This document shows positions 30,427 through 62,069 of a DNA stretch of 64,000 bases, piece by piece. Below the pieces are notes generated by a model. The model was not told where the DNA came from. It searched no databases and saw nothing but the letters and a program-made list of their open reading frames with translations. This DNA is from Mustelus asterias. Lineage: Eukaryota. Where the stretch lies: assembly GCF_964213995.1 (NCBI RefSeq), contig NW_027590882.1:1-64000 (forward strand), in the 5' to 3' direction. A program made the translations under genes and the position numbers. Numbering within the stretch: the stretch's first letter is position 1; each line of letters opens with the position of its first letter.

Positions 30427-30469
30427 ATGGGAATCCTTCTTGTTTTCAGCCTGTGTGTCTGTTTACCCC
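30427..30469 (+). CDS. Leader exon of NAR-TCR V (MGILLVFSLCVCLP)
   Basis: ATG at 30427, 14 hydrophobic codons, phase-1 donor C|gtgagt at 30470. Splices in frame to acceptor tttccag|GG at 30614. Confidence 0.9.
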
Positions 30470-30613
30470 GTGAGTACTAATCGCACTAACCCACATTGTG
30501 TGGATTGAATATAAAGCTGCCCCAGTCCATCCCAATTACAAACACTGGGGTTTTAGCCTCGTTGTGTGGTTCAGCTCTGATGGTCCAATAAACTCTCTGT
30601 GTTTAATTTCCAG

Positions 30614-30895
30614 GGTCTTTCAGTCAGTCAGTGACACAGAGCCCGGAAGCGGTGACCAGGAAGGAATGTCAGTCTCTCACCATCACCTGCGTTTTACATG
30701 GTTATTACTATTACTTAGAAAATGGACATTTCTTCAAACAAACCCAGACCGGGACGGAGTGGGAGCGGATCTCCAGCGGAGGGAGATTTGTTGTGTCTGT
30801 GAACAAAGCAAAAAAGACATTTTCGCTGGAAATTCGGGATGTGAGAGTTGAAGACACCGCCACCTATTACTGTAAAGCTCAGTACCGGTACGACA
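30614..30895 (+). CDS. NAR-TCR V exon (IgNAR-like N-terminal V domain)
   Basis: SFSQSVTQSPEAVTRKECQSLTITCVLHGYYYYLENGHFFKQTQTGTEWERISSGGRFVVSVNKAKKTFSLEIRDVRVEDTATYYCKAQYRYD. It has the VNAR-like short C'-C'' region (ISxGGRF, SLxIxDxxVED, YYCKA), an extra FR1 Cys (RKEC) and is followed by an RSS. Confidence 0.92.
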
Positions 30896-30933
30896 CACCG
30901 TGATGGGCCTCGGCTTCCAGCGATACAAAAACT
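30896..30933 (+). other. RSS of NAR-TCR V (22-bp spacer, 23-class)
   Basis: Heptamer CACCGTG 30896-30902, 22-nt spacer, nonamer ACAAAAACT 30925-30933. Confidence 0.9.
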
Positions 30934-31296
30934 CTCCCTGCAGATTCTCACGGAATCAAATGAAAAACCGGAGTTCATCGGCCCTGAATACCGCCACCCC
31001 CACCCCCTCCCACCCGCCCCCCGCCAATCCCCACAGTTGCACCTCAGACTCTCGGTGCCGCACTCTCGTTTTTAATGAGACCTGATCACTCCCGTTAACA
31101 ATTTCAGTTTCATAAATATGGAGTGTGAGTGGATGGCGGTGTCATTTCTGGGAGTGTTGTCCGTGAATGGAGAATGGAAATGACTGATTCCAGTTACAAA
31201 CCCACACACCAGATGGGATCCTGGGCTCACAGCCGGAGCTGGCAGCCACATTCCGCGCGGTTTAATTCATGTTCCAACATCCCACCCAGTACACAA

Positions 31297-31365
31297 GGTT
31301 TTGATGCTGAATTGTACCACTGTGTTGATTGGAAAGTCACAGTGGAAGGAAGCTGAGCAAATACC
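31297..31365 (+). other. NAR-TCR D segment (TTGATTGGAAAGT, 31325-31337) flanked by 12/12 RSS
   Basis: GGTTTTGAT-12-CACTGTG | 13-nt core | CACAGTG-12-GCAAATACC. Frames read LIGK, stop and DWK. Confidence 0.92.
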
Positions 31366-31676
31366 TGTGCACAATTACAATATAAATTCTCAGGGCCCAG
31401 ACAGTGAATCATTGGTTTGACGATATTATCGCTGTAATCTGGATTACTTCTATTGTAATCTCCACCACTCACATCTTTCTTTGATTTTTTTTGCTATATA
31501 TGAAGTTAATATTTCCTCCCTGCAGCCATTTACTGAGACCTTGGGCCTCACAAAGTACAATTTGAACCGACAGAGACGGTGAAACGTTGAATATTGTTTA
31601 TTAATTTTAAATCCCCCGAATAATTGGACACTTCCGATTGACTGGTGATGGTTTCTCGGCAGATTGAGATGTCGAT

Positions 31677-31774
31677 GGTTCTTGTACCGGGGAGACTGAG
31701 AGAGGTGCCACTGTGTACTGCATGGGAATATGATTATGTGGATGGATCCGGGACGGTGGTGACTGTCACAGCCG
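31677..31774 (+). other. NAR-TCR J segment with 23-RSS (TAWEYDYVDGSGTVVTVTA)
   Basis: Nonamer GGTTCTTGT 31677-85, 23-nt spacer, heptamer CACTGTG 31709-15. Coding 31716-31774 has the IgNAR-like DGxGTVVTV motif, with phase-1 donor G|gtaagt. Confidence 0.92.
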
Positions 31775-33537
31775 GTAAGTGACTCCAAACCCCGCCGTGT
31801 TACAGACTGTCTCGTTTAATGTTCCCCTTCACTTTATCATTGTGATCTGTCTCGTTTCAATCCAATCGAATCTTCCTATGCAAAATCATCCGTTACAGAT
31901 TTCGAGTTGGGAGCAGGATGTGATTCTGGAGTCGGGTCCAGGTCAGTCCCGGGGAAAGTGTCTGTGTGGCCTGATGGAGTCGGCGGTCAGCGGGGCAGGG
32001 ATAGTGGGCTGAGGCTTGTGGGTGGGGGTGGTGGTGAGGCGCTGGGTGCGGTTCAGTGTTCTGTGAGAGTTGACAGAATCTGGGCGATTGTTTTAAGAGG
32101 CACATCAACATCAAGAACTCTGACACTCCTGGGAGTTTTTTTTTAACAAACTCAAATTGACAACACCCCGGAATCCACTCTGGATGTGATATGTGACTGG
32201 GAGAGGTTTGTCTCTCGCTTACAACCCGGCAGCGGGGTCTCAGAGCTCTCTCCTGGGCAGTAGATTGCAGTCCTAGCCGTGCAATGTCAATAAGGTACCG
32301 GGTGAATGAGATCGATGTCACTGCGGCCAGTCCATTTAACCGCAGTGACTCACTCAATACCTGACCCGGGAGACAAACAGAAAATTAAACAACGGGCTTC
32401 AGGTATAAGGGATCTTGTTGTAGGTCCAAAGGAATTTTGTAATAAAGAAATCAGTGGCTGAAATTAGTGACATTGTGCCTGATATTTCTTTAAATATCCT
32501 CCTTATAAACAATAACTTTTTCTCATTTTCCACCGTTAGTGGTTAATTCTGGAGCACAGGTCTTCAGTAAATTGCTGGGATACTTCCAGAGCCCATAGCC
32601 TTTGCAGTATCCTGTGCCTTCAGCCGGTCCTGAAGTCACGTGGAGTGAATCAAATTGGATGAAAATTGACATCAGTGATGCTGGGGACCTCCGGAGGAGA
32701 TTGAGATGGATCATCCACTCGATATCTCTGGATGAGGATTCTTGCCAAGGCTTCAGCTTTATCTTCACCGGATTGACAAATGAGTTATAGGGATGTCTGG
32801 TGTTGCTGCCGGCATTGCCTCCTGCAGTCTTCATTGAACCAGTGTTAATCCCTCGTTTGCTAATGTCAATGCAGGGGACTTAGCACGATTTAGCACGGCG
32901 ACTGTGCCATACTACACGATGGAGTGAAGCTCAATGTGAAGACAATAAATTGTGTCCACATGGACTGCATGTGGTCACTCCTACTGATACTTCTCTGGTG
33001 ATGCATCTGCGGCAGTAAGGTTGCTGAGGCTGAGGTCAAATATACTTTATTCCCTATTGGTAGTTTCCTCGCTACCTACCGCAGTCCCAGTCTGGCAGTT
33101 ATGTCCAGCTATGTGCTACCGAGCCAGTCGTGGTGATTTATATTGAAGCCCCCTAACCAGGATACGTTATGCATGTTTGACATCCTCAGTGCTTCATCCA
33201 GATGTTGTTCAACATGGAGGAGTGTCGATATGTCAGCAGAGGCACATGGTAATCAGCAGACCGCTTCCTTGCCCATGTCTGACCTGATGTCATGAGACTT
33301 CATGCGGTCCAGAGACGGTATTGTGGACTCCCAGGGCAAGTCGCTCCCGACAATATCATGCCGCCAGCTCTACTGAATCTGTCCTGCCAATGGGACAGGA
33401 CATTCCGGATTTGTGATGGTTGTTTGTGGGCGATTGCTGTAATGTATTTGTAGCCCTGATCAGTGTTAACTGAAATCACACAATGCAGTAAGAGTGGAGG
33501 ATGATGTGGTAATTGTATCAAGGAGAACAGGAACAAT

Positions 33538-33875
33538 AGAAAGAATCATAGAAAGAATCATAGAACCCCTACAGTGCAGAAGGAGGCCATTCGGCCCATC
33601 GAGTCTGCACCGACCACAATCCCACCCAGGCCCTACCCTCACATATTTTTACCCACTAATCCCTCTAACCTATGCATCTATGGGGCAATTTTTAACCTGG
33701 CCAATCAACCTAACCCGCACATCTTTGGACTGTGGGAGGAAACCGGAGCACCCGGAGGAAACCCACGCAGACACGAGGAGAATGTGCAAACTCCACACAG
33801 ACAGTGACCCGAGCATCGAACCCGGGACCCTGGAGATGTGAAGCAGCAGCGCTAACCACTGTGCTACCGTGCCGG
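33538..33875 (-). mobile_element. HE1-like SINE in the NAR-J to supporting-V intron
   Basis: Full head, core and tail on the minus strand. Confidence 0.88.
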
Positions 33876-35972
33876 GAACAATTGTGAAGGGAATATCCAT
33901 TTAGAACAATCGATAGAGAATTAATCGACATGGAGAGAAAGATTGGATTATTATTTCTGGAGAATACTGAAAATACAATAAAACTCAAGGATTGAAAACG
34001 AGATTTGCGGAGATTCGAACTGAACTGGAATACTATGTGAGATTTGATCTCCTTTAGTTTGGAAGGATGTACATACTTCGGAGGGAATTTAACTAATATT
34101 CACTAAACAGAGTCTTGGGATAAAATGATTGTCCTTTGAGAAGTGATTGAAGACCCATTGCCTATTTTCCGTCGACTGATATTAGAGGAGTGAGGAGTGA
34201 TCTCAGTAGAATTTATTATATTCTCAAAGGACTTGAAAGGCAGATTCTGGGTGGTAGTTTTTCCAATCTGGGAAGTCTATAATTTGGGGTCACATTTTCA
34301 GAATGACGGTTCAGCAATTTGGACTGCGGAGAGGAGACATTTCTTCAATCAAAGCCATTGTGGTGAATCTGCGAATTCCAGACCACAGAGAACCGTGGAT
34401 AGTTAGTGTTGAACGCATTCAAAGCAGCGTTTGTTACATATTTGTACACTAAAATGGTCAGGGCAAATGTGGACAACACAGGAATTTGTTGTTGAGGCAG
34501 GAAATAAGCTGCAACATAACTGAGTGATGGAGTAGCTTTGAAATGTGGAACAGGAGTTTCTGTACAATGTACAATTTAGAGAAAACTCTGCCCAGAGAAC
34601 CCGGGAGAGAATCAGTTAATGAGCAGAAAAAAATGAAATTGTGAGAGATCCAAAAGAGGCAGTTCCCAGTGAGTAACAGTAAAACCACTGCGGAAAGTGA
34701 ACAGGATGAACGCAACTGACAACTACGAGACTTTAGGACGCGTTCCCACGACTCAGGAAAACCAAACAGCACAAAGTAAATGAAATGAAAGTGACTGGAT
34801 ATCTCAATGTAAAGAGAAGTGGAGAAAAATGATACCAATAGATAGAAAATAAACAAATAGATTAAAAAGCAAACATTGACTCCCGGGAGGTGTTAAACTA
34901 AAATAAATAAATGACATTTGGCCACCGATGGTCAACATGGTTCGGCCCCATCGGAGCTGATGAATCACAATCACTCTGTTGGATCTTGCTGTGTGCTGTG
35001 ATGTGACGCAGCTGGGTTGTTCTTTGGCAATCATCGCCAGAAAAGGATTGCGTCACTGATAATAAAATGTTCCCTTCGATATCGCTCTCAAAAAGGAAAA
35101 TAGAAACTAAAACCTAACATATATCATAGAATAAATTAGCGTGGAAGGGCGACATTCGGCCCCTCGGGTTGATGCTGCCACTTTATAAATGAAATCCAAT
35201 TCTTCCACGAGCCATGAAATTTCCCCAAAACCTGTTGTTTTCCTGTTCAGGTATGTGATCAGTGCTCATTCATAATTCATTGTTAAACCAGCTCCTACTA
35301 AGCTGACAGTGTATTCATAGATTCACAGAATTAACGGCAGATCCAAACTGATCCATGCCGATCAAAATGTCCGTCGAAGCTCTGCCATTCGCCTGCATTT
35401 GGCCGATATCCCTCTAAACCTTTCCTATCCATGTATCTGTCCAAATGCCTTTTAAATGTTGACAATGTCCCTGCCTCAACCACTTTCTCCGACAGCTCAT
35501 TCCACATACGTATCACCCTCTGTGTAAAAAAAAGTTGCTCTGCAGGTTACTTCTTTCCCTATTCCCTCTTGCTCTCGACTCCCAAACCCTGGAAATAAGA
35601 CTGAGTTCATTAGCCCTATCCGTGCCTGTCATGATCTTATACACTTCTATAAGATCACCCCTCTATCTCCTACGCACCAAAGGAAAAAGTCCAAACTCTC
35701 CCTATAACTCAGTCCCTTGAGTCCTGGCAACATCCTTGTAAATCTCTTCTGCACTCCCTCCAGTTTAATAACATCGTTACAGATCATTAGAACTTGTGCA
35801 AAATAAAATGTCACCTCATTGTACACTGGTTTATAGAGTAAGTCAATATCGTTCCATTAGAATTAAAATAATAATAACTCCGCATAAAACTGAGCTACTC
35901 CTGCGACTGACACAATCTCCGACTAAAAAATGGCAAAACCTAAACAAAACTCTTTTTTTTCTAATCCTGCAG

Positions 35973-36290
35973 ATTTCTCTTCCCTTGTATCCAAGAATCC
36001 GCCTCTCCAAATCTCTGCTGCCGATGACACGGTTACATTAAGCTGTGAATATTCAGGAATCTGTCAGTACACAGTACACTGGTACAGTCAGCCCCCAGGG
36101 CAGACTCTGAAATACTTGCTGCAGAAACACACTTCAGGAGGGGGCAATAAAGAAAACGCTGCCGGGGAGAGAATTTCTGCTTCTATCGATTCTGTCCAGA
36201 AAATCAGCCGGTTAAAGATCTCCAAACTGCAACTAAGCGACTCGGCTGTCTATTACTGTGGACTGAGTCGGCACAGATATACGGTGGAGC
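35973..36290 (+). CDS. TRDV: Leaderless supporting TCR-delta V exon of NAR-TCR
   Basis: Acceptor tcctgcag|AT in phase 1 matches the NAR-J donor. DFSSLVSKNPPLQISAADDTVTLSCEYSGICQYTVHWYSQPPGQTLKYLL...LQLSDSAVYYCGLSRHRYTVE has canonical C, WYxQ and YYC plus an extra CDR1 Cys. No leader exon was recognised upstream. Confidence 0.92.
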
Positions 36291-36329
36291 CACAGTAGCT
36301 GAATCTCCCTTAACGCCCGTACAATAACC
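36291..36329 (+). other. 23-RSS following the supporting V
   Basis: CACAGTA, exactly 23 nt, ACAATAACC. Confidence 0.88.
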
Positions 36330-36511
36330 TCCCAGCCTCACAGGAGTGCACCAACCTCTCTCAATAGCACCCCTCTCAGCCCACTCCCAGCCGCTGACCC
36401 CCATCCCCACCGTGATGTTGACCGAGTTTATCATATTACTGGTCTGACCCAACCCTAATCAAATCAGTCGGACACACGACAGAGAGAAAGGGTGGTGAAC
36501 GGGACCGCAAT

Positions 36512-36599
36512 AGATCTTCTTATTGGATCAAACCCTGTGCAACATATGAAAAGGCTAAGCTCATCTTTGGCAACGGGACCAGGCTGATTGTGGAACCCA
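36512..36599 (+). other. TRDJ: J segment 1 (TYEKAKLIFGNGTRLIVEP), 12-RSS, potentially functional
   Basis: AGATCTTCT-12-CCCTGTG (weak nonamer), FGxG motif, donor A|gtaagt at 36600. Confidence 0.88.
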
Positions 36600-37908: not shown

Positions 37909-38000
37909 GGTTCTGACATGGAGAGTAATCGCAGTGTACGCTCGTGCTTCTTACAGACCATTAATATGCGGTGGTGGAACCAAATTGAGCGTGGAGCCAA
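37909..38000 (+). other. TRDJ: J segment 2 (YARASYRPLICGGGTKLSVEP), 12-RSS, Cys replaces Phe of FGxG
   Basis: GGTTCTGAC-12-CGCAGTG, coding 37937-38000, donor A|gtgagt. Confidence 0.85.
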
Positions 38001-38830: not shown

Positions 38831-38921
38831 GCTTTCTGCTTGGGCAATAGTCACTGTGTGTATATTGCTGATAATGAAAAACTGATATTCGGCAGCGGCA
38901 CCCGACTGCAGGTTGTGCCAA
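38831..38921 (+). other. TRDJ: J segment 3 (YIADNEKLIFGSGTRLQVVP), 12-RSS, potentially functional
   Basis: GCTTTCTGC-12-CACTGTG, FGSG motif, donor A|gtaagt. Confidence 0.9.
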
Positions 38922-40480: not shown

Positions 40481-40538
40481 TACTACCGAACTGAGAAGCT
40501 TGTCTTTGGCAAAGGGACCAAACTCACTGTGGAGCCCA
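40481..40538 (+). other. TRDJ: J segment 4 (YYRTEKLVFGKGTKLTVEP), intact coding and donor but no recognisable RSS
   Basis: FGKG motif and A|gtaagt are present. No heptamer ending in GTG sits directly upstream. Confidence 0.8.
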
Positions 40539-41172: not shown

Positions 41173-41266
41173 AGCTTTCTGCTGGTAACTAGTCACGGTG
41201 CTCATTACTATGACGGTACTTATAAACTCGTCTTTGGCTACGGGAAACAACTGAATGTTGTGCCAA
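41173..41266 (+). pseudogene. TRDJ: J pseudogene 5 (HYYDGTYKLVFGYGKQLNVVP), splice donor lost
   Basis: Heptamer CACGGTG 41194-41200 with GCTTTCTGC-like nonamer. Donor reads ataagt. Confidence 0.82.
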
Positions 41267-41389
41267 ATAAGTGCCAGGTGATTTCTCTTTACCCTTCGAT
41301 GGATATTTCTGCAGAATCCATGTCTGGCGAATGGTGACAAAGAGGGAAAGTAACGCTTAAAATTAAAAACAAGCTGTTAGATGGATTTA

Positions 41390-42500
41390 TGTATCATTAG
41401 ATAATTAATTAGAACGATAGAGATCCAGAGGATATAATCAGCAAATTCGTAGATGATACACAAATTGGTGGTGTGGTAAATAGCGAGGAGGAAAGCCTTA
41501 CATTACAGGTCGATATTGAAGGACTGGTCAAATGGGCAGAGCAGTGGAAAATTGAAATTTAACTCTAAAAAGTGTAAGCTGATGTATTTTGGGAGGACTA
41601 ACAGGGCCAGGGAATATACAGAAGTTAATTGAAACTGCATGGAAGGAAAGTTAAACTGCTAGCTATGTCTTGTACTTTTTGAAATAGAGTACAGCAAATA
41701 AAGCAAAAGGGTTAAATGGGGATGGATTTCAGGGAGAGGAATAGTTCTATTTTTGCTTTGGAGATCACCTGGCATTACAATTTGAATCCCAATCGATGGT
41801 CAAATCACCAGGTCAAGCAGGTCAAAAACAACCTCTTGCAATACTGTCAGCACGGGAGTTACGGATTTGTGTAGCATCTTCCATGATTGGCCAGAACATT
41901 GATTACAGGAGTTGGGACGTTTTGTTGAAGTTGTACAAGACATTGGTAAGGTCACATTTGGAATACTGTGTACAATTCTGGTCACCCGATTATAGAAAGT
42001 ATATTATTAAACTAGAAAGAGTGCAGAAAAGATTTACTAGGATGCGACCGGGACTTGATGGTTTGAGGCTGGATAGACTGGGACTTTTTTATCTGGAGTG
42101 TAGAAGATTGAGGTGTGATCTTTAGCGGTTAATAAAATAATGAGGGGTATAGATCAGCTCGATAGTCAGTTTCTTTCCCCAAAGGTAGGGACGTCTAAAA
42201 CTAGAGGGCATAGGTTTATGGTGAGAGGGGCGAGATACAAATGTGTCCAGAGCGGCAATTATGTCACGCAGAGGGTGGTGAATGTCTGGAACAAGCTGCC
42301 AGAGGTAGTAGTAGAGGCGGGTACAATTTTGTCTTTTAGAAAGCATTTAGACAGTTATATTGGTAAGATGGGTACAGAGGAATATGGGCCAAATGCAGGC
42401 AATTGGGATTAGCTTAGGGGTTTAAAAAAAGGCTTCATAGACAAGTTAGGCCGAAGGGCCTGTTTCCATGCTGTAAACCTCTATGAATCTCTGACTCTAT
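41390..42500 (+). mobile_element. CR1/HER1-like LINE fragments
   Basis: LYKTLVRSHLEYCVQFWSP, TRGHRF, and CTCTATGA tail. Confidence 0.82.
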
Positions 42501-42507
42501 GATTGTA

Positions 42508-42567
42508 TCATCCCCACATCTGAAAGGCCGATCCTTGGTACTTGAACAAAACTCACTGTGGAACCTC
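42508..42567 (+). pseudogene. TRDJ: J pseudogene 6 (PTSERPILGT*TKLTVEP)
   Basis: In-frame TGA in the GxG motif, poor donor, and the RSS position is occupied by a LINE 3' tail (ctctatga repeats). Confidence 0.65.
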
Positions 42568-42847
42568 GCATGCATCCTCACAAAGTGCAATGGTCTCACC
42601 CAGCATTTACAGAAAATCTGAACCATATTTGCTGAGATTGTAAAGTGGATAGAAATATATGACATATGGAGCTAACAGGCAAGGAGTGGGAATTAAATGT
42701 AAATTGGTGGATGGGGCGAACATATTTATTTCAGGATATAACCTGCCCTGACTATTGAAGTCAGCAGAATCTGAAATTGAACTCAAAACTCAAACTCAGG
42801 ATAAATAAAATATAAATGAATCTTATATTTCTGCTCAGGTGTTTGTA

Positions 42848-42934
42848 CTTTTTGCCGCATTATGTACACATGTACTAGCACCAGAACTTTGAATCTTATC
42901 TTTGGCAGAGGAAACAAATTCACTGCGCAATCCA
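42848..42934 (+). pseudogene. TRDJ: J pseudogene 7 (STRTLNLIFGRGNKFTAQS)
   Basis: FGRG motif, degenerate RSS, donor ataagt. Paralog of J8. Confidence 0.75.
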
Positions 42935-43450
42935 ATAAGTGGTTTTAAATTTTCAGTTTGGACCTGGTTAGAGTATGAGTAACTGAAGTTACCTCGTTTT
43001 TTTGTTGCGTCGGAAATGGGCATTGCTGGCTAGGCCAGCACTTACATAGCCTGTCCCTCAATGTGGAAGGCAGTGGTGAGCTGCCTTCTTGAACCTGCTG
43101 CACTCGTCCATGTGTTGTGTGTATCATTCCATTCCTGCCTACAAAACATTTCCATTCTGTACAGAGATTGTGGGGAGTGTGGTGGCCAATGGCTACTTGA
43201 AGTTAGCAAGTGCATTAAGTTTCTGACCATTCTTTCCCTCAAAGTTCCTTTTTGCACGATGCAAGTAAATAATTTATTGACCTATTACGTTCAAATGGGT
43301 GGGAAGTGAGGGGGGAGACATTTATATTTTTCGCTGGATATAACCTGCCCTGGCTATTGAAGTCAGCAAAATCTGAAATTGAATTCAAACTCAAACTTAG
43401 GAGACATATAATATAAATAAATCATTCTTCTGCTCATGTGGTTGGGTTTA

Positions 43451-43538
43451 GTTTTTTGTCCCATTGTGTACAGATGTGCTGGCACCAGAACTTTGTAACT
43501 TGTCTTTGGCAGAGGCAACAAATTCACTTTGCGACCCA
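43451..43538 (+). pseudogene. TRDJ: J pseudogene 8 (GTRTL*LVFGRGNKFTLRP)
   Basis: GTTTTTTGT-12-AGATGTG, in-frame TAA, donor ataaga. Confidence 0.78.
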
Positions 43539-43711
43539 ATAAGACATTTGAAAACGTCAGTTTGGATCTGGTTGGAACATAAGTAATTGACCTTTCCTTA
43601 AAGGTTCTCAAGGGCTCACCCTCTTGTGAACTTTGTATATTCCCCTGCCTCCGAATTAATGAGTATGCTTCATCATTACTAAAGGACATCTGCAACTTCA
43701 CTCCAATGGAA

Positions 43712-43789
43712 GGTCTATGTCTGTGCCCTTTATACTATACATTATGACTATACTGTGAAGCTGCGGCACCCAGTTGACAGTTGTGCCAA
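43712..43789 (+). pseudogene. TRDJ: J pseudogene 9 (FG region deleted; ...GTQLTVVP)
   Basis: GGTCTATGT-12-TACTATA degenerate RSS. The 3' half and A|gtgagt donor match J10, with an internal deletion or frameshift. Confidence 0.72.
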
Positions 43790-43934
43790 GTGAGTACGAT
43801 TGGAAGTTACTCTCATTCTGTTTCATGTCGATTATCTTTTCGCTATATTGTGTCTGACAAATAGCAACCAGGGCAACGATACAACGTATTACATGAAATA
43901 CAAGTGAAGGCATTCTGTCCGTAAAATGAACTTC

Positions 43935-46880
43935 AGAAAGATAGAACATGGAACATTACATCGCAGTACAGGCCCTTCGGCCTTCGATGTTGCGCCGACC
44001 AGTGAAACCAATCTAAAGCCCATCTATCCTCCACTATTCCAAAATCATCCATATGTTTATCCAATGACCATTTAAATGCCCTTAATGTTGGCGAGTCCAC
44101 TACTGCTGCAGGCAGAGCATTCCATGCCCTCACTAATCTCTGAGTGAAGAACCTACCTCTGACATCTGTCCTAAATCTATCACCCCTCAATTTAAAGCTA
44201 TGTGCCCTCGTGCTAGCTATCACCATCCGAGGAAAAAGGCTCTCACTATCCACCCTATCTAATCCTCTGATCATTTTGTATGCCTCTATTAAGTCACCTC
44301 TTAACCTTCTTCTCTCTAACGAATACAACCTCAAGTCCCTCAGCCTTTCCTCATAAGACCTTCCTACCATACCAGGCAACATCCTAGTAAATCTCCTCTG
44401 CACCCTTTCCAATGCTTCCACATCCCTCCTACAATGCGGCGACCAGAACTGTACGCAATACTCCAAGTGCGGACGCACCAGAGTTTTGTACAGCTGCAAC
44501 ATGACCTCCTGGCTACGAAACTCAATCCCTCTATCAATAAAAGCGAACACTCTGTACACCTCCTTAACAACCCTATCAACCTGGGTGCCAACTTTCAGGG
44601 ATCTATGCACATGGACACCGAGATTTCTCTGCTCATCCACACTACCAAGTATTTACCATTAGCCCAGTACTCTGTATTCCTGTTACTCCTTCCAAAGTGA
44701 ATCACCTCACACTTTTCCGCATTGACCTCCATTTGCCACCTCTCAGCCCAGCACTGCAGCTTATCTATGTCCCTCTGTAACCTGCAACAACCTTCTGCAC
44801 TGTCCACAACTCCACTGACTTTAGTGTCATCCGCAAATTTACTAACCCATCCTTCTTCGCCCTCATCCAGGTCATTTATAAAAATGACAAACAGCAGTGG
44901 CCCCAAAACAGATCCTTGCGGTACACCACTAGTAACTGAACTCCAGGATAAACATTTCCCATCAACGACCACCCTCTGTCTTCTTACAACTCGCCAATTC
45001 CTGATCCAAACTGCTAAATCACCCTCAATCCCATGCCTCCGTATCTTCTGCAATAGCTTACCGTGGGGAAACTTATCAAACGCTTTACTGAAATCCATAT
45101 ACACCACATCAATTGCTTAACCCTCATCCACCTCTTTGGTCACCTTCTCAAAGAACTCAGCAAGGTTTGTGAGGCACGACCTACCCTTCATAAAACCGTG
45201 TTGACTATCCCTAATCAAATTATTCCTTTCTAGATTATTATAAATCCTATCTCTTATAATCCTTTCCAAAACTTTGCCCACAACAGAAGTAAGGCTCACT
45301 GGTCTATAATTACCAGGGTTGCCTCTACTCCCCTTCTTGTTGTGGTGTATATGGATTTCAGCAAAGCGTTTGATAAGGTTCCCCGTAGTAAGCTTTTGCA
45401 GAAAATACGGACACATGGGATTGAGGGTGATTGAGTGGTTTGGATCAGGAATTGGCTAGCTGTAAGAAAACAGAGGGTGGTGGTTGATGGGAAATATTCA
45501 TCCTGGAGTTCAGTTACTAGTGGTGTACCGCAAGGATCTGTTTTGGGGCCACTGCTGTTTGTCATTTTTATTAATGACTTGGATGAGGGCGTGGAAGGAT
45601 GGATTAGTAAATTTGCGGATGACACTAAAGTCGGTGGAGTTGTAGACAGTGCGGAGGGAAGTGACAGGTGACAGAGGGATATAGATAAGCTGCAGAGCTG
45701 GGCTGAGAGGTGGCAAATGGAGTTTAATGCGGAAAGGTGTGAGGTGATTCACTTTGGAAGGAGTAACAGGAATACAGAGTACTGGGCTAATGGTAAGATA
45801 CTTGGTAGTGTGGATGAACAGAGGGATCTGGGTGTCCATGTGCATAGATCCCTGAAAGTTGGCACCCAGGTTGATAGGGTTGTTAAGAAGGCGTATGGTG
45901 TGTTAGCTTTTATTGGTGGAGGGATTGAGTTTCTGAGCCAGGAGCTCATGCTGCAACTGTACAAAACTCTGGTGCGGCCGCATTTGGAGTATTGCGTACA
46001 GTTCTGGTCGCCATATTATAGGAAAGATGTGGAAGTGTTGGAAAGGGTGCAGAGGAGATTTACCAGGATGTTGCCTGGTATGGTGGGAAAATCGTATGAG
46101 GAAAGGCTGAGGGGCTTGAGGTTGTTTTCGTTAGAGAGAAGAAGGTTAAGAGGTGACTTAATAGAGGCATGCAAGATGATCAGAGGATTAGATAGGGTGG
46201 ATAGTGAGAGCCTTTTTCTTCGGATGGTGTTGGCTAGCACGAGGGGACATAGCTTTAAATTGAGGGGTGAGAGATATAGGACAGATGTTAGAGGTAGGTT
46301 CTTTACTCAGAGAGTAGTAAGGGCGTGGAATGCCCTGCCTGCAGCAGTGGTGGACTCGTCAACGTTGAGAGCGTTCAAGTGGATAAACATATGGATGATA
46401 TTGGAATAGTGTAGATTAGAGGGGCTTTAGATTGGTACCACTGGTCGGCGCAACATCGAGGGCCGAAGGGCCTGTACTGCACTGTAATGTTCTATGTTCT
46501 ATATTCTTGAACAAGGGGACAACATTTGCTATCCTCCAGTCTTCTGACACTATTCCTGTAGTCAATGACGACATAAAGGTCAAAGCCAAAGGCTCTGCAA
46601 TCTCCTCCCTAGCCTCCCAGAGAATCCTGGGATAAATCCTATCCGGCCCAGGGGACTTATCTATTTTCACACTGCCCAGAATTGCTAACGCCTCCTCCTT
46701 ATTAACCTCAATCCCGTCTAGTCCAATAGCCTGTATCTCAGTATTCTCCTCGACAACATTGTCTTTTTCCTGCGTGAATACTGACGAAAAATATTCATTT
46801 AGCGCCTCTCCTATCTCTTCAGGCTCCACGCACAACTTCCCATTACTGTCCTTGACTGGCCCTAATCTTACCCTTGTCAT
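43935..46880. mobile_element. Minus-strand CR1 LINE (43935-45339 + 46503-46880) with an antiparallel same-family copy nested at 45340-46502
   Basis: Host frame ..WRIANVVPLFK|KGSRGNPGNYRPVSLTS is split by the insert. TTCTTG is present at both junctions. Confidence 0.88.
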
Positions 46881-47249
46881 TCCCTAGTCATTACCCTCGA
46901 TAGATGGATAGCGAGCTCAGATCTCAATGCTTAGTTAGACATGCCGCAGGTGGCAGACCAATCTCTGGGCCTCAGCAATGTGACAGACATGGATGTGCGA
47001 CTCACTGGGTGACCTTGCATCCTGGTGAAGTTATGTAACTGGAGGGAAGCGATGTCCTGCTCGTATTACCGCAAAATTATTAACTCCGAAACTCAGCGAA
47101 TATGTGAGGGACCTGGGTTCGAATCCCGTCATGGCAGATAGTGGAATTTGAATTCAATAATCTGGAATTAAGAATCTACTGGTGACCAGGAAAACCATTG
47201 TCGATTGTCGGAAAAACCCATCTGGTTCATTAATTTCCTCTCGGGAAGG

Positions 47250-48530
47250 AAACATAGGAACATTGAAAATGGGAGCAGGAAGGGGCGTTTGGCCTTTCAA
47301 GCATGATCTGCCATTTATTATGATCATGGTTGATCATCCACTCAATAGCCTAATCCTGCTTTCTCCCCATTAACCTTTGATCCCATTCGCTTCAAGTGCT
47401 ATATCCAGCCGCTTCTTGAATACATTCAATCTTTTGGCAACAACTACTTCCTGTGGTAATAAATTTCACAGGCTCACCACTCTTTGGGTTAAGAAATGTC
47501 TCCTCACCTCCGTCCTAAATGGTCTACCCGGAATCCTCAGACCCCTGGTTCTGGACTCCCGCACCATCGGGAATATCCTCTCTTCATCTACTATGCCTTG
47601 TCCTGTTCGAATTTTATAAGTCTCTATGAGATCCATTGTCATCCCTTTAAGTAAGTCTCCCTAATCTATGAAGGCCAAATCACGCCTCATATCTTCATAG
47701 TCTCCTTGATTAAGATTCAGCACAGTAGTCTCCGAGTCAACTACTTCACTCTCCACCTTGATAAAAAATTCTCTCATGTTTTGTTCACTCATCCCCAAGG
47801 GGTCTTGCACAGCTCGATTGGCAATTATTACCTTCTCACGACACAGTACCCAGTCTAAGGTGACCTGCTCCCTCGTTGGTTCCTTCACATATTGGTCAGG
47901 GAAACTATCCCGTATCCGGTCCAGGAAATCCTTCTCTACAGCATTGTGGCTAATTTGATTTACTCAATCAACGTGCGGATTAAAATCACCCTTGATCACA
48001 TGTATTTCTAATTTCGTGTTTAATGCCATTTCCAACATCACCACTGCAGTTTCGCGGTCTGTATATGACACCCACTGATGTTTTCTGCCCCTTGGTATCT
48101 CTCAACTCTACCCATATAGACTCCACATTATCAGAGCTAATATCGGTTCTCACCAGTTTGTTAATTTCCTCTTTAACCAGCAGTGCCGCTCCACCACCTT
48201 TTCCTTTATGCCTGTCCTTCCTAAATACTGAATACCCTGGGACATTCAGTTCCCATTCTTGGGAACCCTGCAGCCGTGTCTCCATAATTCCAATTATAGC
48301 ATGCCCATTTATATCTATCTGCAAGATTAGTTCATCCACTCTATTGCCAATGCTCCGCGCATTAAGGCACAGAGCCTTTCAGCTTGTCTTTTTAACATTA
48401 ATTGTCTCGTTTTTGAATTTTGTCCTTGGTTTCTCTGTATATCATTTTTCGTATTCCCTTTTCCACCTCTTGATTTTATCCTTGTTCCCTCCTTCTCTGA
48501 CTCCTTACATAATTTCCCAACCACCTGGCA
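47250..48530 (-). mobile_element. CR1-like LINE fragments incl. endonuclease region
   Basis: IIGIxETxL, FRKDR..GGG.ALLVKE, GVIYRP motifs. Confidence 0.78.
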
Positions 48531-49488: not shown

Positions 49489-49566
49489 GGTTTCTGTCTG
49501 AGCAATTGTTACTGTGCTACGAAAAGCTAACGTTCGGCAACGGCACCCAGGTGACAGTTGTACCAA
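49489..49566 (+). other. TRDJ: J segment 10 (YEKLTFGNGTQVTVVP), 12-RSS, potentially functional
   Basis: GGTTTCTGT-12-TACTGTG, FGNG motif, donor A|gtgagt. Confidence 0.92.
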
Positions 49567-50326: not shown

Positions 50327-50414
50327 CGATTTTGTACCATCTGGAATCACTGTGCAAACCCTGCAACCAGAAAGCTTACCTTTGGCAGTGGAACCGAACT
50401 CACTGTAGAACCCA
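50327..50414 (+). other. TRDJ: J segment 11 (NPATRKLTFGSGTELTVEP), 12-RSS, potentially functional
   Basis: CGATTTTGT-12-CACTGTG, FGSG motif, donor A|gtaagt. Confidence 0.92.
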
Positions 50415-57412: not shown

Positions 57413-57552
57413 ACCCGTGTGTGTGTGTATGTATATGTGTGCGCGCGTGTGTGTGTGTATGTGTGTGTGTGTTTGTGTGCATATGTGTCTATGCATGTCC
57501 GTCTATCTGCTTATATGCCTGGGCATGTGTGCGTTTGCATGTGAGTGTGTGA

Positions 57553-57586
<34 letters not shown>

Positions 57587-57786
57587 AAGAGGCGTCACTC
57601 CTCAGCCTTCTCTGTGCCAAGCGAAAAAGCCCTAATTATCCAGTCTCAGCATTCGGTAAATTCATGGAGAAACTCACATAGGGTTAAGAGATAGAAAAAA
57701 TGCGGGTCTAATCGAATGGCTCAGCAGGTTGGAGGAGGTCACTCTGTTGGATTCTGATTATTTCCCTTTATTTATTAAACTTTCAG

Positions 57787-58098
57787 AGGCGAAAGGCCCG
57801 GTAGAACCAAAATTGAGCGTCTTTTACCCGCCAGTGCCACGGGGACCCACCGGCATCGACACAGCTGCAGTATGCTTGGCCTCGGACTTCTCGCCCAACG
57901 CAATCAAGCTCTCCCTGTACACGGGATCGGGCCAGGAGGTCAATGTGACAAGACCCAGTGTCCTATTGGAGAGCGGGAATTACAGGAGCTCGGGTTTTCT
58001 CTCTTTCACCCAATCCGAGGAATCGCCAAACATCACGTGCAAGGCATTTCACGATAATCGAAATTACTCAGTAAACATCCCGCCCACAGTTGAAATTG
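57787..58098 (+). CDS. TRDC: TCR delta constant region, Ig-C1 exon
   Basis: tttcag|AG phase 1, G|gtaagt. KAKGPVEPKLSVFYPP...AAVCLASDFSP...NVTRPSVLLESGNYRSSGFLSF...NITCKAFH contains both Ig Cys. It resembles shark C-delta more than C-alpha (recalled, not aligned), and its position after a NAR-TCR cassette fits delta. Confidence 0.88.
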
Positions 58099-59539
58099 GT
58101 AAGTTTATTTTATTTTCGTTCACGTGATGTGGGTGTCGTTGGCTTGGCCAACATTTATTGCCCGTCCTAAATTGCCCTTCAGCAGAGGACATTTAAGAGT
58201 CACTTGCCGGCCAGACCATGTAAGGACGGCAGATTTCGTTCGCTAAAGGAAGTTAGTGAACCAGTGAGTTTTAACGATAATCGACAATGGTTTCAGGGTC
58301 ATCATGAAACTTTTAATTCCAATTTTTAAAAAAATGTTCAAATTTCGCAGCTGCCATCCCCAGGTCAGCATTCTGGGTCGTTGGATTACCAGTCCAGTGA
58401 CAATGCCACTGCGCCACTGCCTCCTCTGAGAATGTTTTATGACAGGAAGAACTTGCACTAAATATTATCCATCCTCTTAACGACCGAAGGACTCTCGGTG
58501 TCATCGTCACTCAAAGTGTAGTCTTTTTGAAAGGTTAGCTGACTAATGATTGACTGTCAATTATCCTAGTCTGGGGACTTCACTGCAGGAGTTCCTCAGT
58601 GTCTCAGGCCTAACCAGCTTCAGTTGCTTCATCAATCACCTTCAATCCATTGTAAGGTCAGAAGTTGGGATGTTCGCTGATGACTGAATAATTTTCAGCA
58701 CCATTCATGACACCTCAGATCTTGAAGTAGTGCATTACAAATGCACCAATAGCTGGACAATACCTAGGCTTTGACTGACAAGCTGCAAGTAACATTTGCG
58801 CCACACATGTTCCAGGCAATGACCAACTCCAACAGGAAAGAAGCTAACAACCGGCTCTTGACATGTAATGGCATTACCATGACTGAAACAATGAACAAAG
58901 AACAAAGAAAATTACAGCACAGGAACAGGCCCTTCGGCCCTCCAAGCCTGCACCGACTATGCTGCCCGACTTAACTAAAACCCCTTTCCCTTCCGGGGAC
59001 CATATCGCTCTATTCCCATCTTATTCATGTATTTGTCCAGGTGTCCCTTAAAACTCACGATCGTATCTCCTTCCACTACCTCACCCGGCAGCGAGTTCCA
59101 GGCACGCACCACCTTCTGTGTAAAAACTCTGCCTTGTACGTCTCCTGTAAACCTCGCCCCTCGCACCTTAAACCTATGCCCCCGAGTAATTGACTCTTCC
59201 ACCCTGGGAAAAAGCTTCTAACTATCCACTCTGTCCATGCCTCTCATAATCCTGTAGACTTCTATCAGGTCAACCCCCACTATCAACATCCTGAGGGTTA
59301 ACGTTGCTCAGAAACTGAACTGGACTATCCATATAAGTGCTGTGGCTGCAAGAGAATGTCGGAGATTGGGAATCCTGTGGTGAGTAACGTATCTCCTCAT
59401 CCCCCAAATTCTCTGCCCCATCCACAAGACATAATCATGACTGTGGTAGTGTATTCGCCACTTGCCTCGATGAATGCAGCTCCAAGAACACTCAGACATT
59501 TGACACGACCCAGGACAAAGCAGCTCCGCTTGATTAACA

Positions 59540-59905
59540 GTGTGTTTATGAGTGTCACAAGTCGGCTTACATTAAAACTGCAATGAATTTATTGTGACAA
59601 TCCCATAGTCGCCACACTCTGTGCCTGTTCGGGTACACTGAGGGAGAATTTAGCATGGCCAATGCATCTAATCAGCACGTCTTTCGGACTGTGGGAGGAA
59701 ACCGGAGCGCCCGGATCAAACCCACGCTGACACGAGGAAAACGTGCAGACTCTGCACAGACAGTCACCCAAGCTGGGAATCGAACACAGGTCCCTGACAC
59801 TGTGGGCGGGGGGGAGTGGCGGGGGGGGGGGCGGAGGGGAGTGGCGGGGCGTTGGGGGGGGGGGGGTGGCGGTGCAGCAGTACTAACCACTGTGCCACTG
59901 TGCGG
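59540..59905 (-). mobile_element. HE1-like SINE interrupted by a G-rich tract
   Basis: Head is split at about 59803-59875 by G runs. Confidence 0.8.
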
Positions 59906-60822
59906 CTCAAGCATTAAGTACTCTATTCACAAACATCCACTTCTTCCACCACCGAAGCACAATGGCAGCAGTGTGTGCCATCCACAAGATACACAGCAGT
60001 AACTCTCCAAGTCTCCTTCCGCTGAATCTTCCAAACTCACGACCGTTATCATCTCGGAGGACAAGGGCAGCAGATACCTGGGAACACCATCATCTGGACG
60101 TTACCCTCCATGTCACTCAGCATCCTGACTTGGAAATGTTTCGGCAGTTCCTTCACTGTCGCAGAGTCAAAATGGTGGAACTTCTTCCCTAACAGCACTG
60201 TGTGTGTACGTACCCCTGACAGACTGCAGAGGTTCAAGCAGGAGACTCACAACCATCTTCTGAAGGGGGCAATTAGGGATTGGCAATAAATGCTGACCTG
60301 CCAGTGATGTCCACATTCCGTAAATGAATAAAAATAATAAGAGCTAACTATTATAATTCAGGGCAGTGTGCAGGACCCGTAACTGCTGGTACATCACCGA
60401 ATTTAGGAACGTATTAAATACTAACGAGGGTACTGGAGAATCCCGTTCCTCTGGAGAAATGCCCTGATATCATTTAATCCACTGCAGAGCTGAAATCAGG
60501 CCTCGGTTTCACGACGTTTTCGGAAGACAGTGAAATACTGCACTGATGGAACGGCTCTGGATCCTGGGTTTTAATCCCTGATGGGGAATCTACCCTGCAC
60601 TCTTTGAACTCAGAATTGGGACGAACTAAATGGCAGAGCTACCAATGTTTCTCCGTTGTGAATAATCAAGTGAACAAGTCCAATCGTGCTGTTTGATTCT
60701 TACTTTCTTCGTGGCTTTTGGTTATGACAACAACATTATTCAAAGTGATATTGAGAACAAACATGGTTACAGTAATGTCACTTGCTCACTTAATAAGTCA
60801 AATGTCATTTTTGCCCTTCCAG

Positions 60823-60885
60823 ATAAACCTAAATGCCCTACAGGTCGAAGTGATTCCTTGACAGAATCAAGTGACACGGAAAACG
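60823..60885 (+). CDS. TRDC: TCR delta constant region, connecting-peptide exon (DKPKCPTGRSDSLTESSDTEN)
   Basis: cttccag|AT ... G|gtatgt, 63 nt, phase 1-1, contains the interchain Cys. Confidence 0.85.
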
Positions 60886-61327
60886 GTATGTGCTTTATTC
60901 AACATTTATCAAAGTAAAATACTTGCAAATAGACGGATTGATAAGTGGACAAATAGGCACGGATACAGACCCGGAGATTGAATGATAAACATATAGTGAG
61001 ATGGGGAAAAAGATAGATTGTCACACAGAGTGAGGGAGAGAGATATATCAATCGAGCGGGATAGCGAGAGAGGAGGAGAGGCGGGGAGAGAGAGAGAAAC
61101 TCAGAGTGAAAGAGAGATGAAGATAGATAGACAGGCAAGCAGACGGTCGGACGGACGGACTGACAGAGATGGACAGACGGACGGACGGACAGGGATGGAC
61201 AGACGGACGAAAGTCAAGCTGTTAGATAATGGAAAAAATATCACATTAGAGGTATACAGTTGTTTTTCAATACCAAATCATATATCCATTAAACCAGATC
61301 TATCATTTGTTTCTCTTATTTTGGCAG

Positions 61328-61437
61328 ATCGACTGAGGATGAACTTTTTGTCTTTGACGGTGATGGGGCTAAGAATTTTGTTTTTCAAGAGCATTGTCTT
61401 CAATGTCATGATGACGGCCAGGGTGTGGCTATTTTGA
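61328..61437 (+). CDS. TRDC: TCR delta constant region, TM/cytoplasmic exon (DRLRMNFLSLTVMGLRILFFKSIVFNVMMTARVWLF*)
   Basis: ggcag|AT phase 1. Alpha/delta-type TM with Arg and Lys, TGA 61435-37, then G|gtaagg donor. Confidence 0.93.
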
Positions 61438-61639
61438 GGTAAGGTCGGTCACCTGAATGCGTGCCAAGAAAGACAAACTGTGATGAACAATGACCATTGA
61501 CGGGATCTCGCGAGGCCACTGTTAAGGCAGACGCTGAAACTAACCCGTGGAGTGAGCATTAACTTGGATGCATTTAGACAAACGAACTCTTACTCCAGTG
61601 CCCCATCCTCATCGCTTTTCATCCCTCCCTTGCCACCGC

Positions 61640-61731
61640 ACCACCGCCCCCCCCCCCGCCCCCGCCGCCCCCCCCCCCCGCCCCCGCCCCCGCCCCCGCC
61701 GCCCCCCCCCCGCCCCCGCCCGCCAACCCCC
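61640..61731 (-). repeat. C-run tract (G-quadruplex-prone on minus strand) in the last TRDC intron
   Basis: About 90 nt of (C)n-G repeats. Confidence 0.8.
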
Positions 61732-62034
61732 GTTCCCAATCGCAGCCTTGACTTCTTAAACCTCTCCAGATTTTTGTTTAATTATGGGTGTCACTGACTA
61801 GCCTAACCTTTTCCGCCCATCCCTTGGTCTTGAGCTGCGTGGCTCTTTCGGAGAGTCGGTGCAGACTCTATGGGCCAAATCGCATCCTTCTGCACTGTCG
61901 GGGTTCTTGTGCAATTGCAGTGGCTTCTGAGAATATTATTGGAGAATGTTAATGGAGACCCTAAAGATACAAGGTGTTCTTTGCTTGCTGACTCTTTGAT
62001 GTGCTACTACTGTTGCTCCTTCCATTCCAAACAG

Positions 62035-62069
62035 AACTGCATTGGACGATGAAATGGATTCAGGTGTGA
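62035..62069 (+). other. TRDC: Start of probable terminal (3'UTR) exon of TRDC
   Basis: Pyrimidine tract and acag| acceptor downstream of the donor at 61439. The 3' end is undetermined; the first AATAAA I noticed is at 63112. Confidence 0.5.

What the first reader, a model, noticed from the sequence alone, without database searches (positions are those of the whole stretch)
30427..62069. Self-contained NAR-TCR mini-locus with its own J array and C-delta (TCR-mu-like cluster organisation)
Seen: a single ordered + strand unit of L-V(NAR)-D-J(NAR), leaderless supporting V, about 11 J and C. I recognised no other V, D or J segment in the preceding 30 kb and no D-delta anywhere before the J array. 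Established: NAR-TCR is a doubly rearranging shark TCR-delta, usually described as NAR VDJ + supporting V cassettes that join to the shared D-delta/J-delta/C-delta. Inference: this may be a separate, dedicated NAR-TCR locus with a second C-delta. That would parallel marsupial/monotreme TCR-mu clusters and the second VH-delta locus of galliform birds.
Basis: partly seen in the sequence, partly recalled or inferred. Interest (0 to 1): 0.85.

Follow-up and report, generated by a model that had tools for sequence, protein, structure and literature searches.

The report
Shark NAR-TCR delta gene minicluster
A 31-kb stretch of a smooth-hound-type shark genome holds a complete two-V-domain (NAR-TCR) T-cell-receptor delta unit with its own joining segments and its own constant gene, apparently one of several such units, whereas shark T-cell-receptor genes are described as a single shared array.

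Summary
On the + strand, in order, lie:
- NAR leader, V, D and J with Ig-type signals (23 / 12-12 / 23);
- a leaderless supporting V-delta with a 23-RSS;
- 11 J-like segments: 3 fully canonical, 3 borderline, 5 disabled;
- an intact three-exon C gene.

No other V, C or D-delta was found in the 64 kb.

The C is delta-type. It carries the published trdc exon-1 signature CLXXXFXP, and its best functionally named hit is skate "T cell receptor delta constant".

Public Mustelus asterias gene models show 10 C-delta-bearing models on 9 scaffolds, with 8 distinct sequences among the 10 models over the exon-1 residues they cover. All 6 models that contain a supporting V run on into a C, against 2 of 18 in nine other elasmobranchs. 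One model has C exon 1 identical to the window.

So this is most likely one member of a lineage-specific family of NAR-TCR/J/C-delta miniclusters.

Not shown:
- expression;
- direct, D-less V-J joining;
- dedication of the J array and C to the NAR cassette;
- separation from the alpha/delta locus;
- that none of the copies are haplotigs.

The scan's first readers noted similar units on other pieces of this genome (s1-893487, s1-892779).

The parts
30427..30469 (+). NAR-TCR leader exon (ATG, 14 codons plus 1 nt, donor GT at 30470)
   Evidence: Sequence; boundary. Reads MGILLVFSLCVCLP, as in the M. asterias models P0003 and P0032.
30614..30895 (+). NAR-type V exon with a 23-type RSS directly 3' (heptamer at 30896, nonamer ACAAAAACT)
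   Evidence: Pfam V-set E 4.3e-9. RSS. Has the a-b loop Cys (KECQS) and FF in place of the WY of WYRK (translation; criteria from passages of PMC1845163).
31325..31337 (+). NAR D segment (13 nt) flanked by 12-RSS on both sides
   Evidence: 5' heptamer 7/7 and nonamer 7/9; 3' heptamer 7/7 and nonamer 7/9.
31716..31774 (+). NAR J segment (..DGSGTVVTVTA) with a 5' 23-RSS and a 3' donor GT, phase 1
   Evidence: heptamer 7/7, nonamer 8/9, spacer 23.
35973..36290 (+). Leaderless supporting V-delta, entered by an AG acceptor in phase 1, with a CDR1 Cys (SGICQY). Its tail is YYCGLSRHRYTVEP.
   Evidence: V-set E 6e-14. It is 97.9% identical to the supporting V of models P0037 and P0038.
36291..36329 (+). 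23-RSS of the supporting V (CACAGTA, 23 nt, ACAATAACC)
   Evidence: heptamer 6/7, nonamer 8/9.
36540..36599 (+). J1 (..KLIFGNGTRLIVEP, GT donor). Lies 249 bp after the supporting V. RSS is weak (CCCTGTG, nonamer 5/9).
37937..38000 (+). J2, a variant (CGGGTKLSVEP, GT donor, heptamer CGCAGTG)
38859..38921 (+). J3, canonical (KLIFGSGTRLQVVP, CACTGTG heptamer, 12 spacer, GT donor)
40485..40538 (+). J4 (KLVFGKGTKLTVEP, GT donor), with a degenerate heptamer
   Evidence: heptamer read by eye.
41201..43789 (+). Five disabled J-like segments. J5 41201-41266 has an AT donor. J6 is about 42516-42565 and has a stop codon. J7 42874-42935 and J8 43479-43539 have lost the donor G. J9 43757-43789 has lost the FG motif.
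   Evidence: nhmmer E 1.3e-10 to 0.018; translations; boundaries.
49517..49566 (+). J10, canonical (YEKLTFGNGTQVTVVP). The same J peptide is used in model P0038.
   Evidence: P0038 sequence; tblastn.
50355..50414 (+). J11, canonical (RKLTFGSGTELTVEP)
57787..58098 (+). C-delta exon 1 (C1-set Ig domain, contains CLASDFSP)
   Evidence: It is 100% identical over 103 aa to M. asterias P0038. The trdc signature comes from a passage of PMC10322711.
60823..60885 (+). C-delta exon 2 (connecting peptide KPKCPTGRSDSLTESSDTEN, with the interchain Cys)
   Evidence: identical in P0038 and P0002.
61328..61438 (+). C-delta exon 3 (transmembrane LSLTVMGLRILFFKSIVFNVMMTARVWLF, stop 61435-61437, then a GT donor)
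   Evidence: PDB matches to TCR alpha and TCR delta transmembrane segments.

Best explanation
This is one unit of a multi-copy, lineage-specific family of NAR-TCR delta miniclusters in a Mustelus-type shark. Each unit carries a NAR L-V-D-J cassette, a leaderless supporting V-delta, its own J-delta array and its own C-delta.

Inferred working:
1. RAG joins NAR V(23) to D(12/12) to J(23).
2. Separately, RAG joins the supporting V(23) directly to one of the usable J(12) segments 0.25-14 kb downstream. No D is involved, and the 12/23 rule allows this.
3. Transcription starts at the NAR leader.
4. Splicing runs leader > NAR VDJ > supporting VJ > C exons 1-3. The phase is 1 at the NAR J > supporting V and J > C exon 1 junctions.
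5. The product is a three-domain delta chain with the hinge Cys for pairing with gamma, and the TM Arg and Lys for CD3 assembly.

Shown here: the anatomy, the signal types, the open frames, the splice phases, the delta identity of C, and the existence of many C-delta-bearing gene models in M. asterias.

Inferred: rearrangement, expression, D-less joining, and that the copies are true paralogues.
For: Anatomy and 12/23 logic:
-.
- No D-delta and no other V or C in 64 kb.

Delta identity of C:
- CLASDFSP fits the trdc signature CLXXXFXP and not the trac signature CLXTD (passage of PMC10322711; translation).
- Of the 29 hits of the exhaustive representative search, I looked up names for 10. None is named delta except the skate 'T cell receptor delta constant'; the rest carry automatic or uninformative names.

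Multi-copy evidence:
- The exon-1 search gave 2 M. asterias models.
- The search with the C region of P0003 gave 8 more. These 10 models lie on 9 scaffolds, two of them on one 20.4-Mb scaffold.
- They show 8 distinct sequences over the exon-1 residues they cover. Identity among the 8 full-length exon 1 sequences is 81.6-100%; the two truncated models (63-64 residues) are each unique.
- All 6 of 6 M. asterias models with a supporting V also hold C exon 1 and the TM exon. In nine other elasmobranch species this is 2 of 18.
- P0035, from another contig, chains J-like exons in the same order as the window's J2, J4, J8 and J10, then a C that is 95% identical.
- Contigs of 4 runs of the same or a very close organism carry the paralogue-type variants of exon 1 (57846 C>G, Pro>Ala; 57907 A>T, Lys>Met) beside introns that match the window exactly.
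- Unchecked scan notes report like units on other pieces of this genome.
Against: - No RNA evidence at all. Nothing shows that this copy rearranges or is expressed.
- Eight of the nine scaffolds are 0.03-1.8 Mb, and some could be unpurged haplotigs. Two pairs of C are 99-100% identical. [quoted passage not shown]
- The 5' half of the window's exon 1 was not seen exactly in three of the four runs laid.
- 61339 A (Met) is private to the window.
- Reviews and a 2025 genome study call cartilaginous-fish TCR loci translocon (PMC6795676; PMC12227049 section 6).
- Only 3 of 11 J are fully canonical.
- The C-domain tree leaves the Mustelus copies in an open fork.
Confidence: 0.6

Rival explanations
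1. This is the ordinary 3' end of a single alpha/delta translocon. The NAR cassette is simply the last V unit before the one shared J-delta/C-delta, and the other 'copies' are assembly or annotation artefacts (haplotigs, collapsed or duplicated scaffolds).
For: Published descriptions call shark TCR loci translocon. Most other C-bearing scaffolds are small. Two pairs of C are 99-100% identical. Three unnamed cDNA-like entries (P0018, P0049, P0050) with different NAR V share one C start, as expected where a single C exists.
Against: There are 8 distinct sequences among the 10 models, with exon-1 identity down to 81.6%, far beyond two alleles. Two different C models lie on the same 20.4-Mb scaffold. 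No D-delta lies in the 36 kb before the J array. An unchecked note puts V segments, not J-alpha, about 19-29 kb past the window's end. Paralogue-type exon-1 variants are present in read contigs.
Confidence: 0.12
2. The cluster is real, but its J array and C are not dedicated to the NAR cassette. Conventional V-delta, VH-type V or inverted V segments lying beyond the window also rearrange to these J, as in any small translocon.
For: The J carry ordinary 12-RSS that any 23-RSS V could use. Unchecked notes report V segments in mixed orientation downstream, and VH-D-J-delta-C-delta units elsewhere. The basking-shark model P0008 chains a NAR cassette, a J, further V domains, a J and a C.
Against: No other V lies within 30 kb upstream or 2.6 kb downstream. 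All six M. asterias models with a supporting V lead into a C. None of the ten C-bearing models contains a recognisable conventional V. P0034 carries an unclassified N-terminal part.
Confidence: 0.3
3. This is a silent, decaying duplicate. The unit is a recent segmental copy that is no longer used.
For: Five of 11 J are disabled and three more are doubtful. LINE debris fills 43.9-48.3 kb inside the J array and much of the C introns. The TM exon carries a private Met. No RNA holder was found.
Against: Every coding element needed is intact. Both V frames are open. The NAR D, the NAR J and J3, J10 and J11 have canonical RSS; the two V-segment RSS keep a 6/7 heptamer and 8/9 nonamer. The splice sites and phases fit, and all three C exons are open. 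C exons 1-2 are identical in protein to a RefSeq model.
Confidence: 0.2

Closest known systems
NAR-TCR (doubly rearranging TCR delta) of nurse shark and elephant shark (Criscitiello et al. 2006, recalled, paper not held; passages of PMC1845163 and PMC5931798 read)
   Same: Both have a NAR-type V with a leader, an a-b loop Cys and no Trp in WYRK. Both have their own D and J, and splice from the NAR J into a leaderless supporting V-delta with a CDR1 Cys. Both end in a delta C.
   Different: There the cassette is described as part of 'the TcR delta locus' (PMC5931798), in a translocon (PMC6795676). Here the cassette is followed within 250 bp by its own J array and within 21 kb by its own C, no D-delta is present, and the species holds many C-delta copies.
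TCR-mu clusters of marsupials and monotremes (PMC7615758, PMC3457774, passages read)
   Same: Both give a three-domain chain with an unpaired N-terminal V and a supporting V. Both have tandem or multiple clusters, each with its own C. In platypus the supporting V also rearranges without D.
   Different: They are not homologous. The N-terminal V here is NAR-type, not VH-type, and the C is plain delta with only lineage-specific divergence, not a distinct isotype. Unlinked status is not shown. The supporting V is not fully germline-joined as it is in marsupials.
Second TCR-delta locus (VH-delta) of galliform birds (Parra et al. 2012, seen only as a citation; PMC5278385 abstract for duck TCR-delta2)
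   Same: An extra C-delta serves an antibody-related V outside the main arrangement.
   Different: The bird locus is a single extra locus with a VH-type V and a two-domain chain. Here there are many copies and a three-domain chain.
Shark Ig miniclusters (V-D-D-J-C), as summarised in PMC12227049 section 6
   Same: Short self-contained V..J..C units are repeated many times in the genome, with segments a few hundred bp apart (supporting V to J1 is 249 bp).
   Different: This unit spans 31 kb, holds an 11-member J array and two rearranging V units, and encodes a TCR chain.

Membership tests
NAR-TCR | N-terminal NAR-type V with its own leader, a Cys in the a-b loop, and no Trp in the WYRK motif | tested here: met
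   Leader MGILLVFSLCVCLP. KECQS lies before the TITC Cys. HFFKQ stands in place of WYRK. Criteria from passages of PMC1845163.
NAR-TCR | The NAR V has its own D and J and rearranges separately | tested here: met
   The germline segments and their RSS are present: V 23-RSS, D with 12-RSS on both sides, J 23-RSS. Rearrangement itself was not observed.
NAR-TCR | A leaderless supporting V-delta with a CDR1 Cys, entered by splicing from the NAR J | tested here: met
   Donor GT at 31775 and acceptor AG at 35971-2, both in phase 1. CDR1 reads SGICQY. The in-frame upstream ATG gives a non-hydrophobic MAKPKQNSFFSNPA.
NAR-TCR | Expressed as a three-domain chain on a delta C | not testable with these tools
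   No RNA run holding the stretch was on record. Gene models P0003, P0032, P0036, P0037 and P0038 chain NAR V, supporting V and C but are automatic predictions.
TCR delta constant gene (trdc) | Exon-1 signature CLXXXFXP, as opposed to the trac signature CLXTD followed by F or XF | tested here: met
   CLASDFSP. Signature from the methods passage of PMC10322711. The same pattern is in the skate protein named T cell receptor delta constant.
TCR delta constant gene (trdc) | Closer to named delta than to alpha constants | tested here: inconclusive
   Of the 29 representative hits, names were looked up for 10. The only functionally named TCR hit among them is skate delta (E 2.4e-7). No shark alpha C was available for comparison. 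The TM exon scores 30.9 bits to a PDB alpha and 29.0 bits to a PDB delta. Exon 1 against PDB gives only generic C1-set hits.
Canonical TRA/TRD translocon | [quoted passage not shown] | tested here: inconclusive
   No J-like hit lies after exon 3 in the remaining 2.6 kb. No D-delta lies in the 57 kb before C. What lies further out could not be read. An unchecked note reports V segments 19-29 kb downstream.
Cluster-type (TCR-mu-like) organisation | Each unit holds its own V(D)J segments and its own C | tested here: met
   This window.
Cluster-type (TCR-mu-like) organisation | Several such units per haploid genome | tested here: inconclusive
   Ten C-bearing M. asterias models on 9 scaffolds, with 8 distinct sequences over the exon-1 residues they cover. 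Haplotigs are not excluded, and no DNA of the other copies was seen (closed).
Cluster-type (TCR-mu-like) organisation | A locus separate from TRA/TRD, and a distinct C isotype | tested here: not met
   The isotype part is not met: the C copies are 81.6-100% alike and delta-type. Separation of the locus was not testable.

The most novel reading that the evidence does not exclude
In the smooth-hound lineage the TCR delta genes, or at least the NAR-TCR part, have left the translocon layout. They exist instead as many self-contained miniclusters (NAR V-D-J, a D-less supporting V, a private J array and a private C-delta). This would be an independent re-invention of the TCR-mu cluster design, and the first cluster-type TCR locus in a cartilaginous fish. 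Different NAR-TCR specificities would be hard-wired to different C-delta variants.
Probability: 0.45. Interest if true: 0.8.

Novelty: new variant of a known kind. Interest (0 to 1): 0.62.

Why it matters
Reviews state that TCR genes of cartilaginous fish are translocon, in contrast to their clustered Ig genes (PMC6795676). A 2025 genome study says the same for four elasmobranchs (PMC12227049).

A family of NAR-TCR units, each with its own J array and C-delta, would have three consequences:
- It would show that TCR delta can adopt the Ig-like cluster layout within sharks.
- It would give a second, independent case beside TCR-mu of a three-domain TCR organised in clusters with a D-less supporting V.
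- It would make testable whether the supporting domain is structural only, and whether C-delta variants differ in pairing or signalling.

It also warns annotators that counting one TRDC per shark genome can be wrong.

Tried and rejected
1. C-alpha instead of C-delta: rejected on the CLXXXFXP signature and the skate delta hit. The PDB searches could not decide: exon 1 gave generic C1-set hits and the TM exon gave near-equal alpha and delta scores.

2. A hidden D-delta: strict and relaxed RSS scans found none.

3. Further V or C in the window: none. The upstream 13-28 kb is LINE sequence.

4. RNA support: the look-up of sequencing runs listed no RNA holder. Read laying gave contigs only. It could show paralogue-type variants but no copy number, splice or joint.

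Collinearity rests on gene models alone.

6. An old, NAR-dedicated C lineage: not supported. The tree leaves the Mustelus copies in an open fork with short branches, and the two Heptranchias C pair with each other at 99/96. I left out 3 partial rows of 22 (P0001, P0002, P0018).

7. Gene models as evidence of rearranged transcripts: rejected. Their V-to-C or V-to-J junctions use the GT inside the AGT codon after YYC(A/G)L, so they look like predicted splices, not coding joints (read).

8. Prior publication: searches found no paper describing several C-delta genes or NAR-TCR clusters in a shark. The key papers (PMC1458790, PMC3222143, PMC7909615, PMC7039070) are not held. Figure 1 and table S1 of PMC12227049 could not be seen and may already show more than one TCR delta box.

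Full report
**What is in the window: the NAR cassette and supporting V**

From 30427 to 61438 on the + strand there is one ordered unit (sequence; boundaries).
- A leader exon (30427-30469) splices into a NAR-type V exon (30614-30895).
- The V is followed by a 23-type RSS.
- A 13-nt D (31325-31337) has 12-RSS on both sides.
- A J (31716-31774) has a 23-RSS, and its GT donor leaves one base over.
- 4.2 kb further on, an AG acceptor opens a leaderless V exon (35973-36290). It takes up that phase and ends in a 23-RSS.
- Pfam calls both V exons V-set and C exon 1 C1-set.

The NAR V has the a-b loop Cys and lacks the Trp of WYRK. The supporting V has the CDR1 Cys. These are the features listed for NAR-TcR genes in passages of PMC1845163.

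**The J array**

A motif scan found five J with FGxGT and a GT donor. A profile built from those five found 11 hits at E <= 0.018. All are on the + strand between 36.5 and 50.4 kb, and nothing else in 64 kb scored below E 1.7. The five seeds match by construction. Read one by one:
- J3, J10 and J11 are canonical in RSS, motif and donor.
- J1, J2 and J4 are open but have a weak heptamer, or CGGGT in place of FGxGT.
- J5 to J9 are disabled.
- LINE fragments fill 43.9-48.3 kb between J9 and J10.

**The C gene**

- Exon 1 (57787-58098) is an open C1-set domain.
- Exon 2 (60823-60885) is a short connecting peptide with a Cys.
- Exon 3 (61328-61438) holds the transmembrane segment with Arg and Lys four residues apart. 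It is followed by a stop and a further GT donor.

C exon 1 contains CLASDFSP. This fits the trdc exon-1 signature CLXXXFXP and not the trac signature CLXTD, both taken from the methods of PMC10322711 (passage).

In an exhaustive search of 1.84 billion representatives, 29 proteins matched at E <= 0.001. I looked up names for 10 of them. The only functionally named TCR hit among those is skate 'T cell receptor delta constant'; the others carry automatic or uninformative names. PDB comparisons could not separate alpha from delta.

**What is absent**

- tblastn of both V domains and all C exons found no other V or C in the window.
- A relaxed search for short segments flanked by two RSS found only the NAR D. 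Two weak pairs are at the level of shuffled sequence.
- The upstream 13-28 kb is LINE sequence with one intact 1068-aa ORF.
- An N gap lies at 5063-5191.
- The supporting V faces J1 across 249 bp. By the 12/23 rule it can join any of the J directly.

**Is this the only C-delta?**

No, at least not in Mustelus asterias, the source of every close protein hit.
- The exon-1 search returned two M. asterias models.
- A search with the C part of model P0003 returned eight more.
- These ten models lie on nine scaffolds, and two are on one 20.4-Mb scaffold.
- Over the exon-1 residues they cover they show 8 distinct sequences. Identity among the eight full-length exon 1 sequences is 81.6-100%. The two truncated models (P0001, P0002) cover only 63-64 of 103 residues and match no other model.
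- P0038 has exon 1 and the exon-2 peptide (read) identical to the window, and it uses the window's J10 peptide. Its NAR V is only 83% identical, and it holds an exon that the window lacks. The window is therefore either another copy or another haplotype or individual.

A search with the NAR V plus supporting V part of P0038 gave 26 proteins. Among genome-derived models that contain a supporting V:
- all 6 of 6 from M. asterias also contain C exon 1 and the TM exon;
- 2 of 18 from nine other elasmobranch species do (Cetorhinus P0008, Heptranchias P0040); the rest read through the RSS and stop.

P0035, from a 34-kb contig, chains J-like exons in the order of the window's J2, J4, J8 and J10, and then a C that is 95% identical. 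That is what a block duplication would give.

Heptranchias has two different C on one 1.7-Mb contig.

**Reads**

No RNA run holding the stretch was on record.

Contigs of four runs of one coded organism were laid on 57500-61500:
- The introns and exons 2-3 are matched by contigs with 0-2 differences.
- Over exon 1 the laid contigs carry variants that recreate the P0035-P0037 type of C (57846 C>G gives Ala; 57907 A>T gives Met).
- The window's own letter survives as a minority in X1 and X2 and as the only form in X4 at 57907.
- 61339 is G (Val) in all four runs and in all ten models, against A (Met) in the window.

This fits several near-identical C copies. The tool warns that contig depth is not copy number.

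**Age of the copies**

A maximum-likelihood tree of exon 1 was built from 19 of 22 rows; the three partial rows were left out. It puts the skate delta sequences apart (100/99) and leaves the Mustelus copies on very short branches in an open fork. It pairs the two Heptranchias C at 99/96. The copies are lineage-specific duplicates or homogenised genes, not an old separate isotype.

**Literature**

- PMC6795676 (passage) states that TCR segments of cartilaginous fish are in translocon arrangement.
[quoted passage not shown] Its Fig. 1 and table S1 were not visible to me.
- PMC5931798 (passage) says the delta locus encodes NAR-TcR.
- PMC3457774 and PMC7615758 (passages) describe TCR-mu clusters, the D-less supporting V of platypus, and TCR-mu as the only TCR known with germline-joined V.
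- Eight searches found no paper describing several C-delta genes or NAR-TCR clusters in a shark.
- The original NAR-TcR paper and the nurse-shark locus paper are not held. What I say of them is recalled.

**Verdict**

It is too narrow in speaking of a second C-delta, and unproven in 'separate' and 'dedicated'.

The best reading (0.6) is one member of a family of NAR-TCR/J/C-delta miniclusters in a Mustelus-type shark. The main open risks are haplotig inflation, lack of any transcript evidence, and possible prior description in material I could not read.

Noticed in passing
window 36251-36599: The supporting V runs 11 codons past its Cys (CGLSRHRYTVEP) before the heptamer. Read-through models of other sharks end after about 7 (ALSRHTA, ALSRRTA, ALSRLTA). 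The tail here is therefore about 4 codons (12 nt) longer, with a heptamer-like CACAGAT 19 nt before the real one. An old V-D fusion is possible but not shown. J1 starts only 249 bp further on.
   Followed up: partly
window 36540-36599, compared with proteins P0008, P0032, P0037, P0050: A J of the type LIFGNGTRLIVEP follows the supporting V in two other M. asterias models and in a basking-shark model. A close variant (LLFGNGTRLIVRP) appears in an unnamed cDNA-like entry. A J next to the supporting V may be an old part of the cassette.
   Followed up: partly
window 61339: A (Met, DRLRMNF) in the window, against G (Val) in all four laid runs and in all ten M. asterias models. It is a private allele or an assembly error in the TM exon.
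   Followed up: partly
window 13000-28000: GC-rich (0.59-0.68) repeated LINE copies, with duplicated peptides about 7 kb apart and one intact 1068-aa endonuclease/RT ORF at 17254-20460. A scan note calls it a Tx1 trimer.
   Followed up: no
window 43900-48350: Inverted and direct LINE reverse-transcriptase fragments split the J array between J9 and J10 (ORFs).
   Followed up: no
window 5063-5191: A run of 129 N lies 25 kb upstream of the NAR leader, so linkage to anything further upstream crosses a gap or masked stretch.
   Followed up: no
proteins P0006 and P0040 (Heptranchias perlo, one 1.7-Mb contig): Two different delta-type C regions lie on one contig, one of them chained to a NAR J and supporting V. 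More than one C-delta may not be limited to Mustelus.
   Followed up: partly
window 61600-61730: A long C-rich low-complexity run (CCCCGCCCC repeats) lies just after the TM exon, and (GACG/GACA)n repeats lie at 61130-61210 in the intron before it.
   Followed up: no
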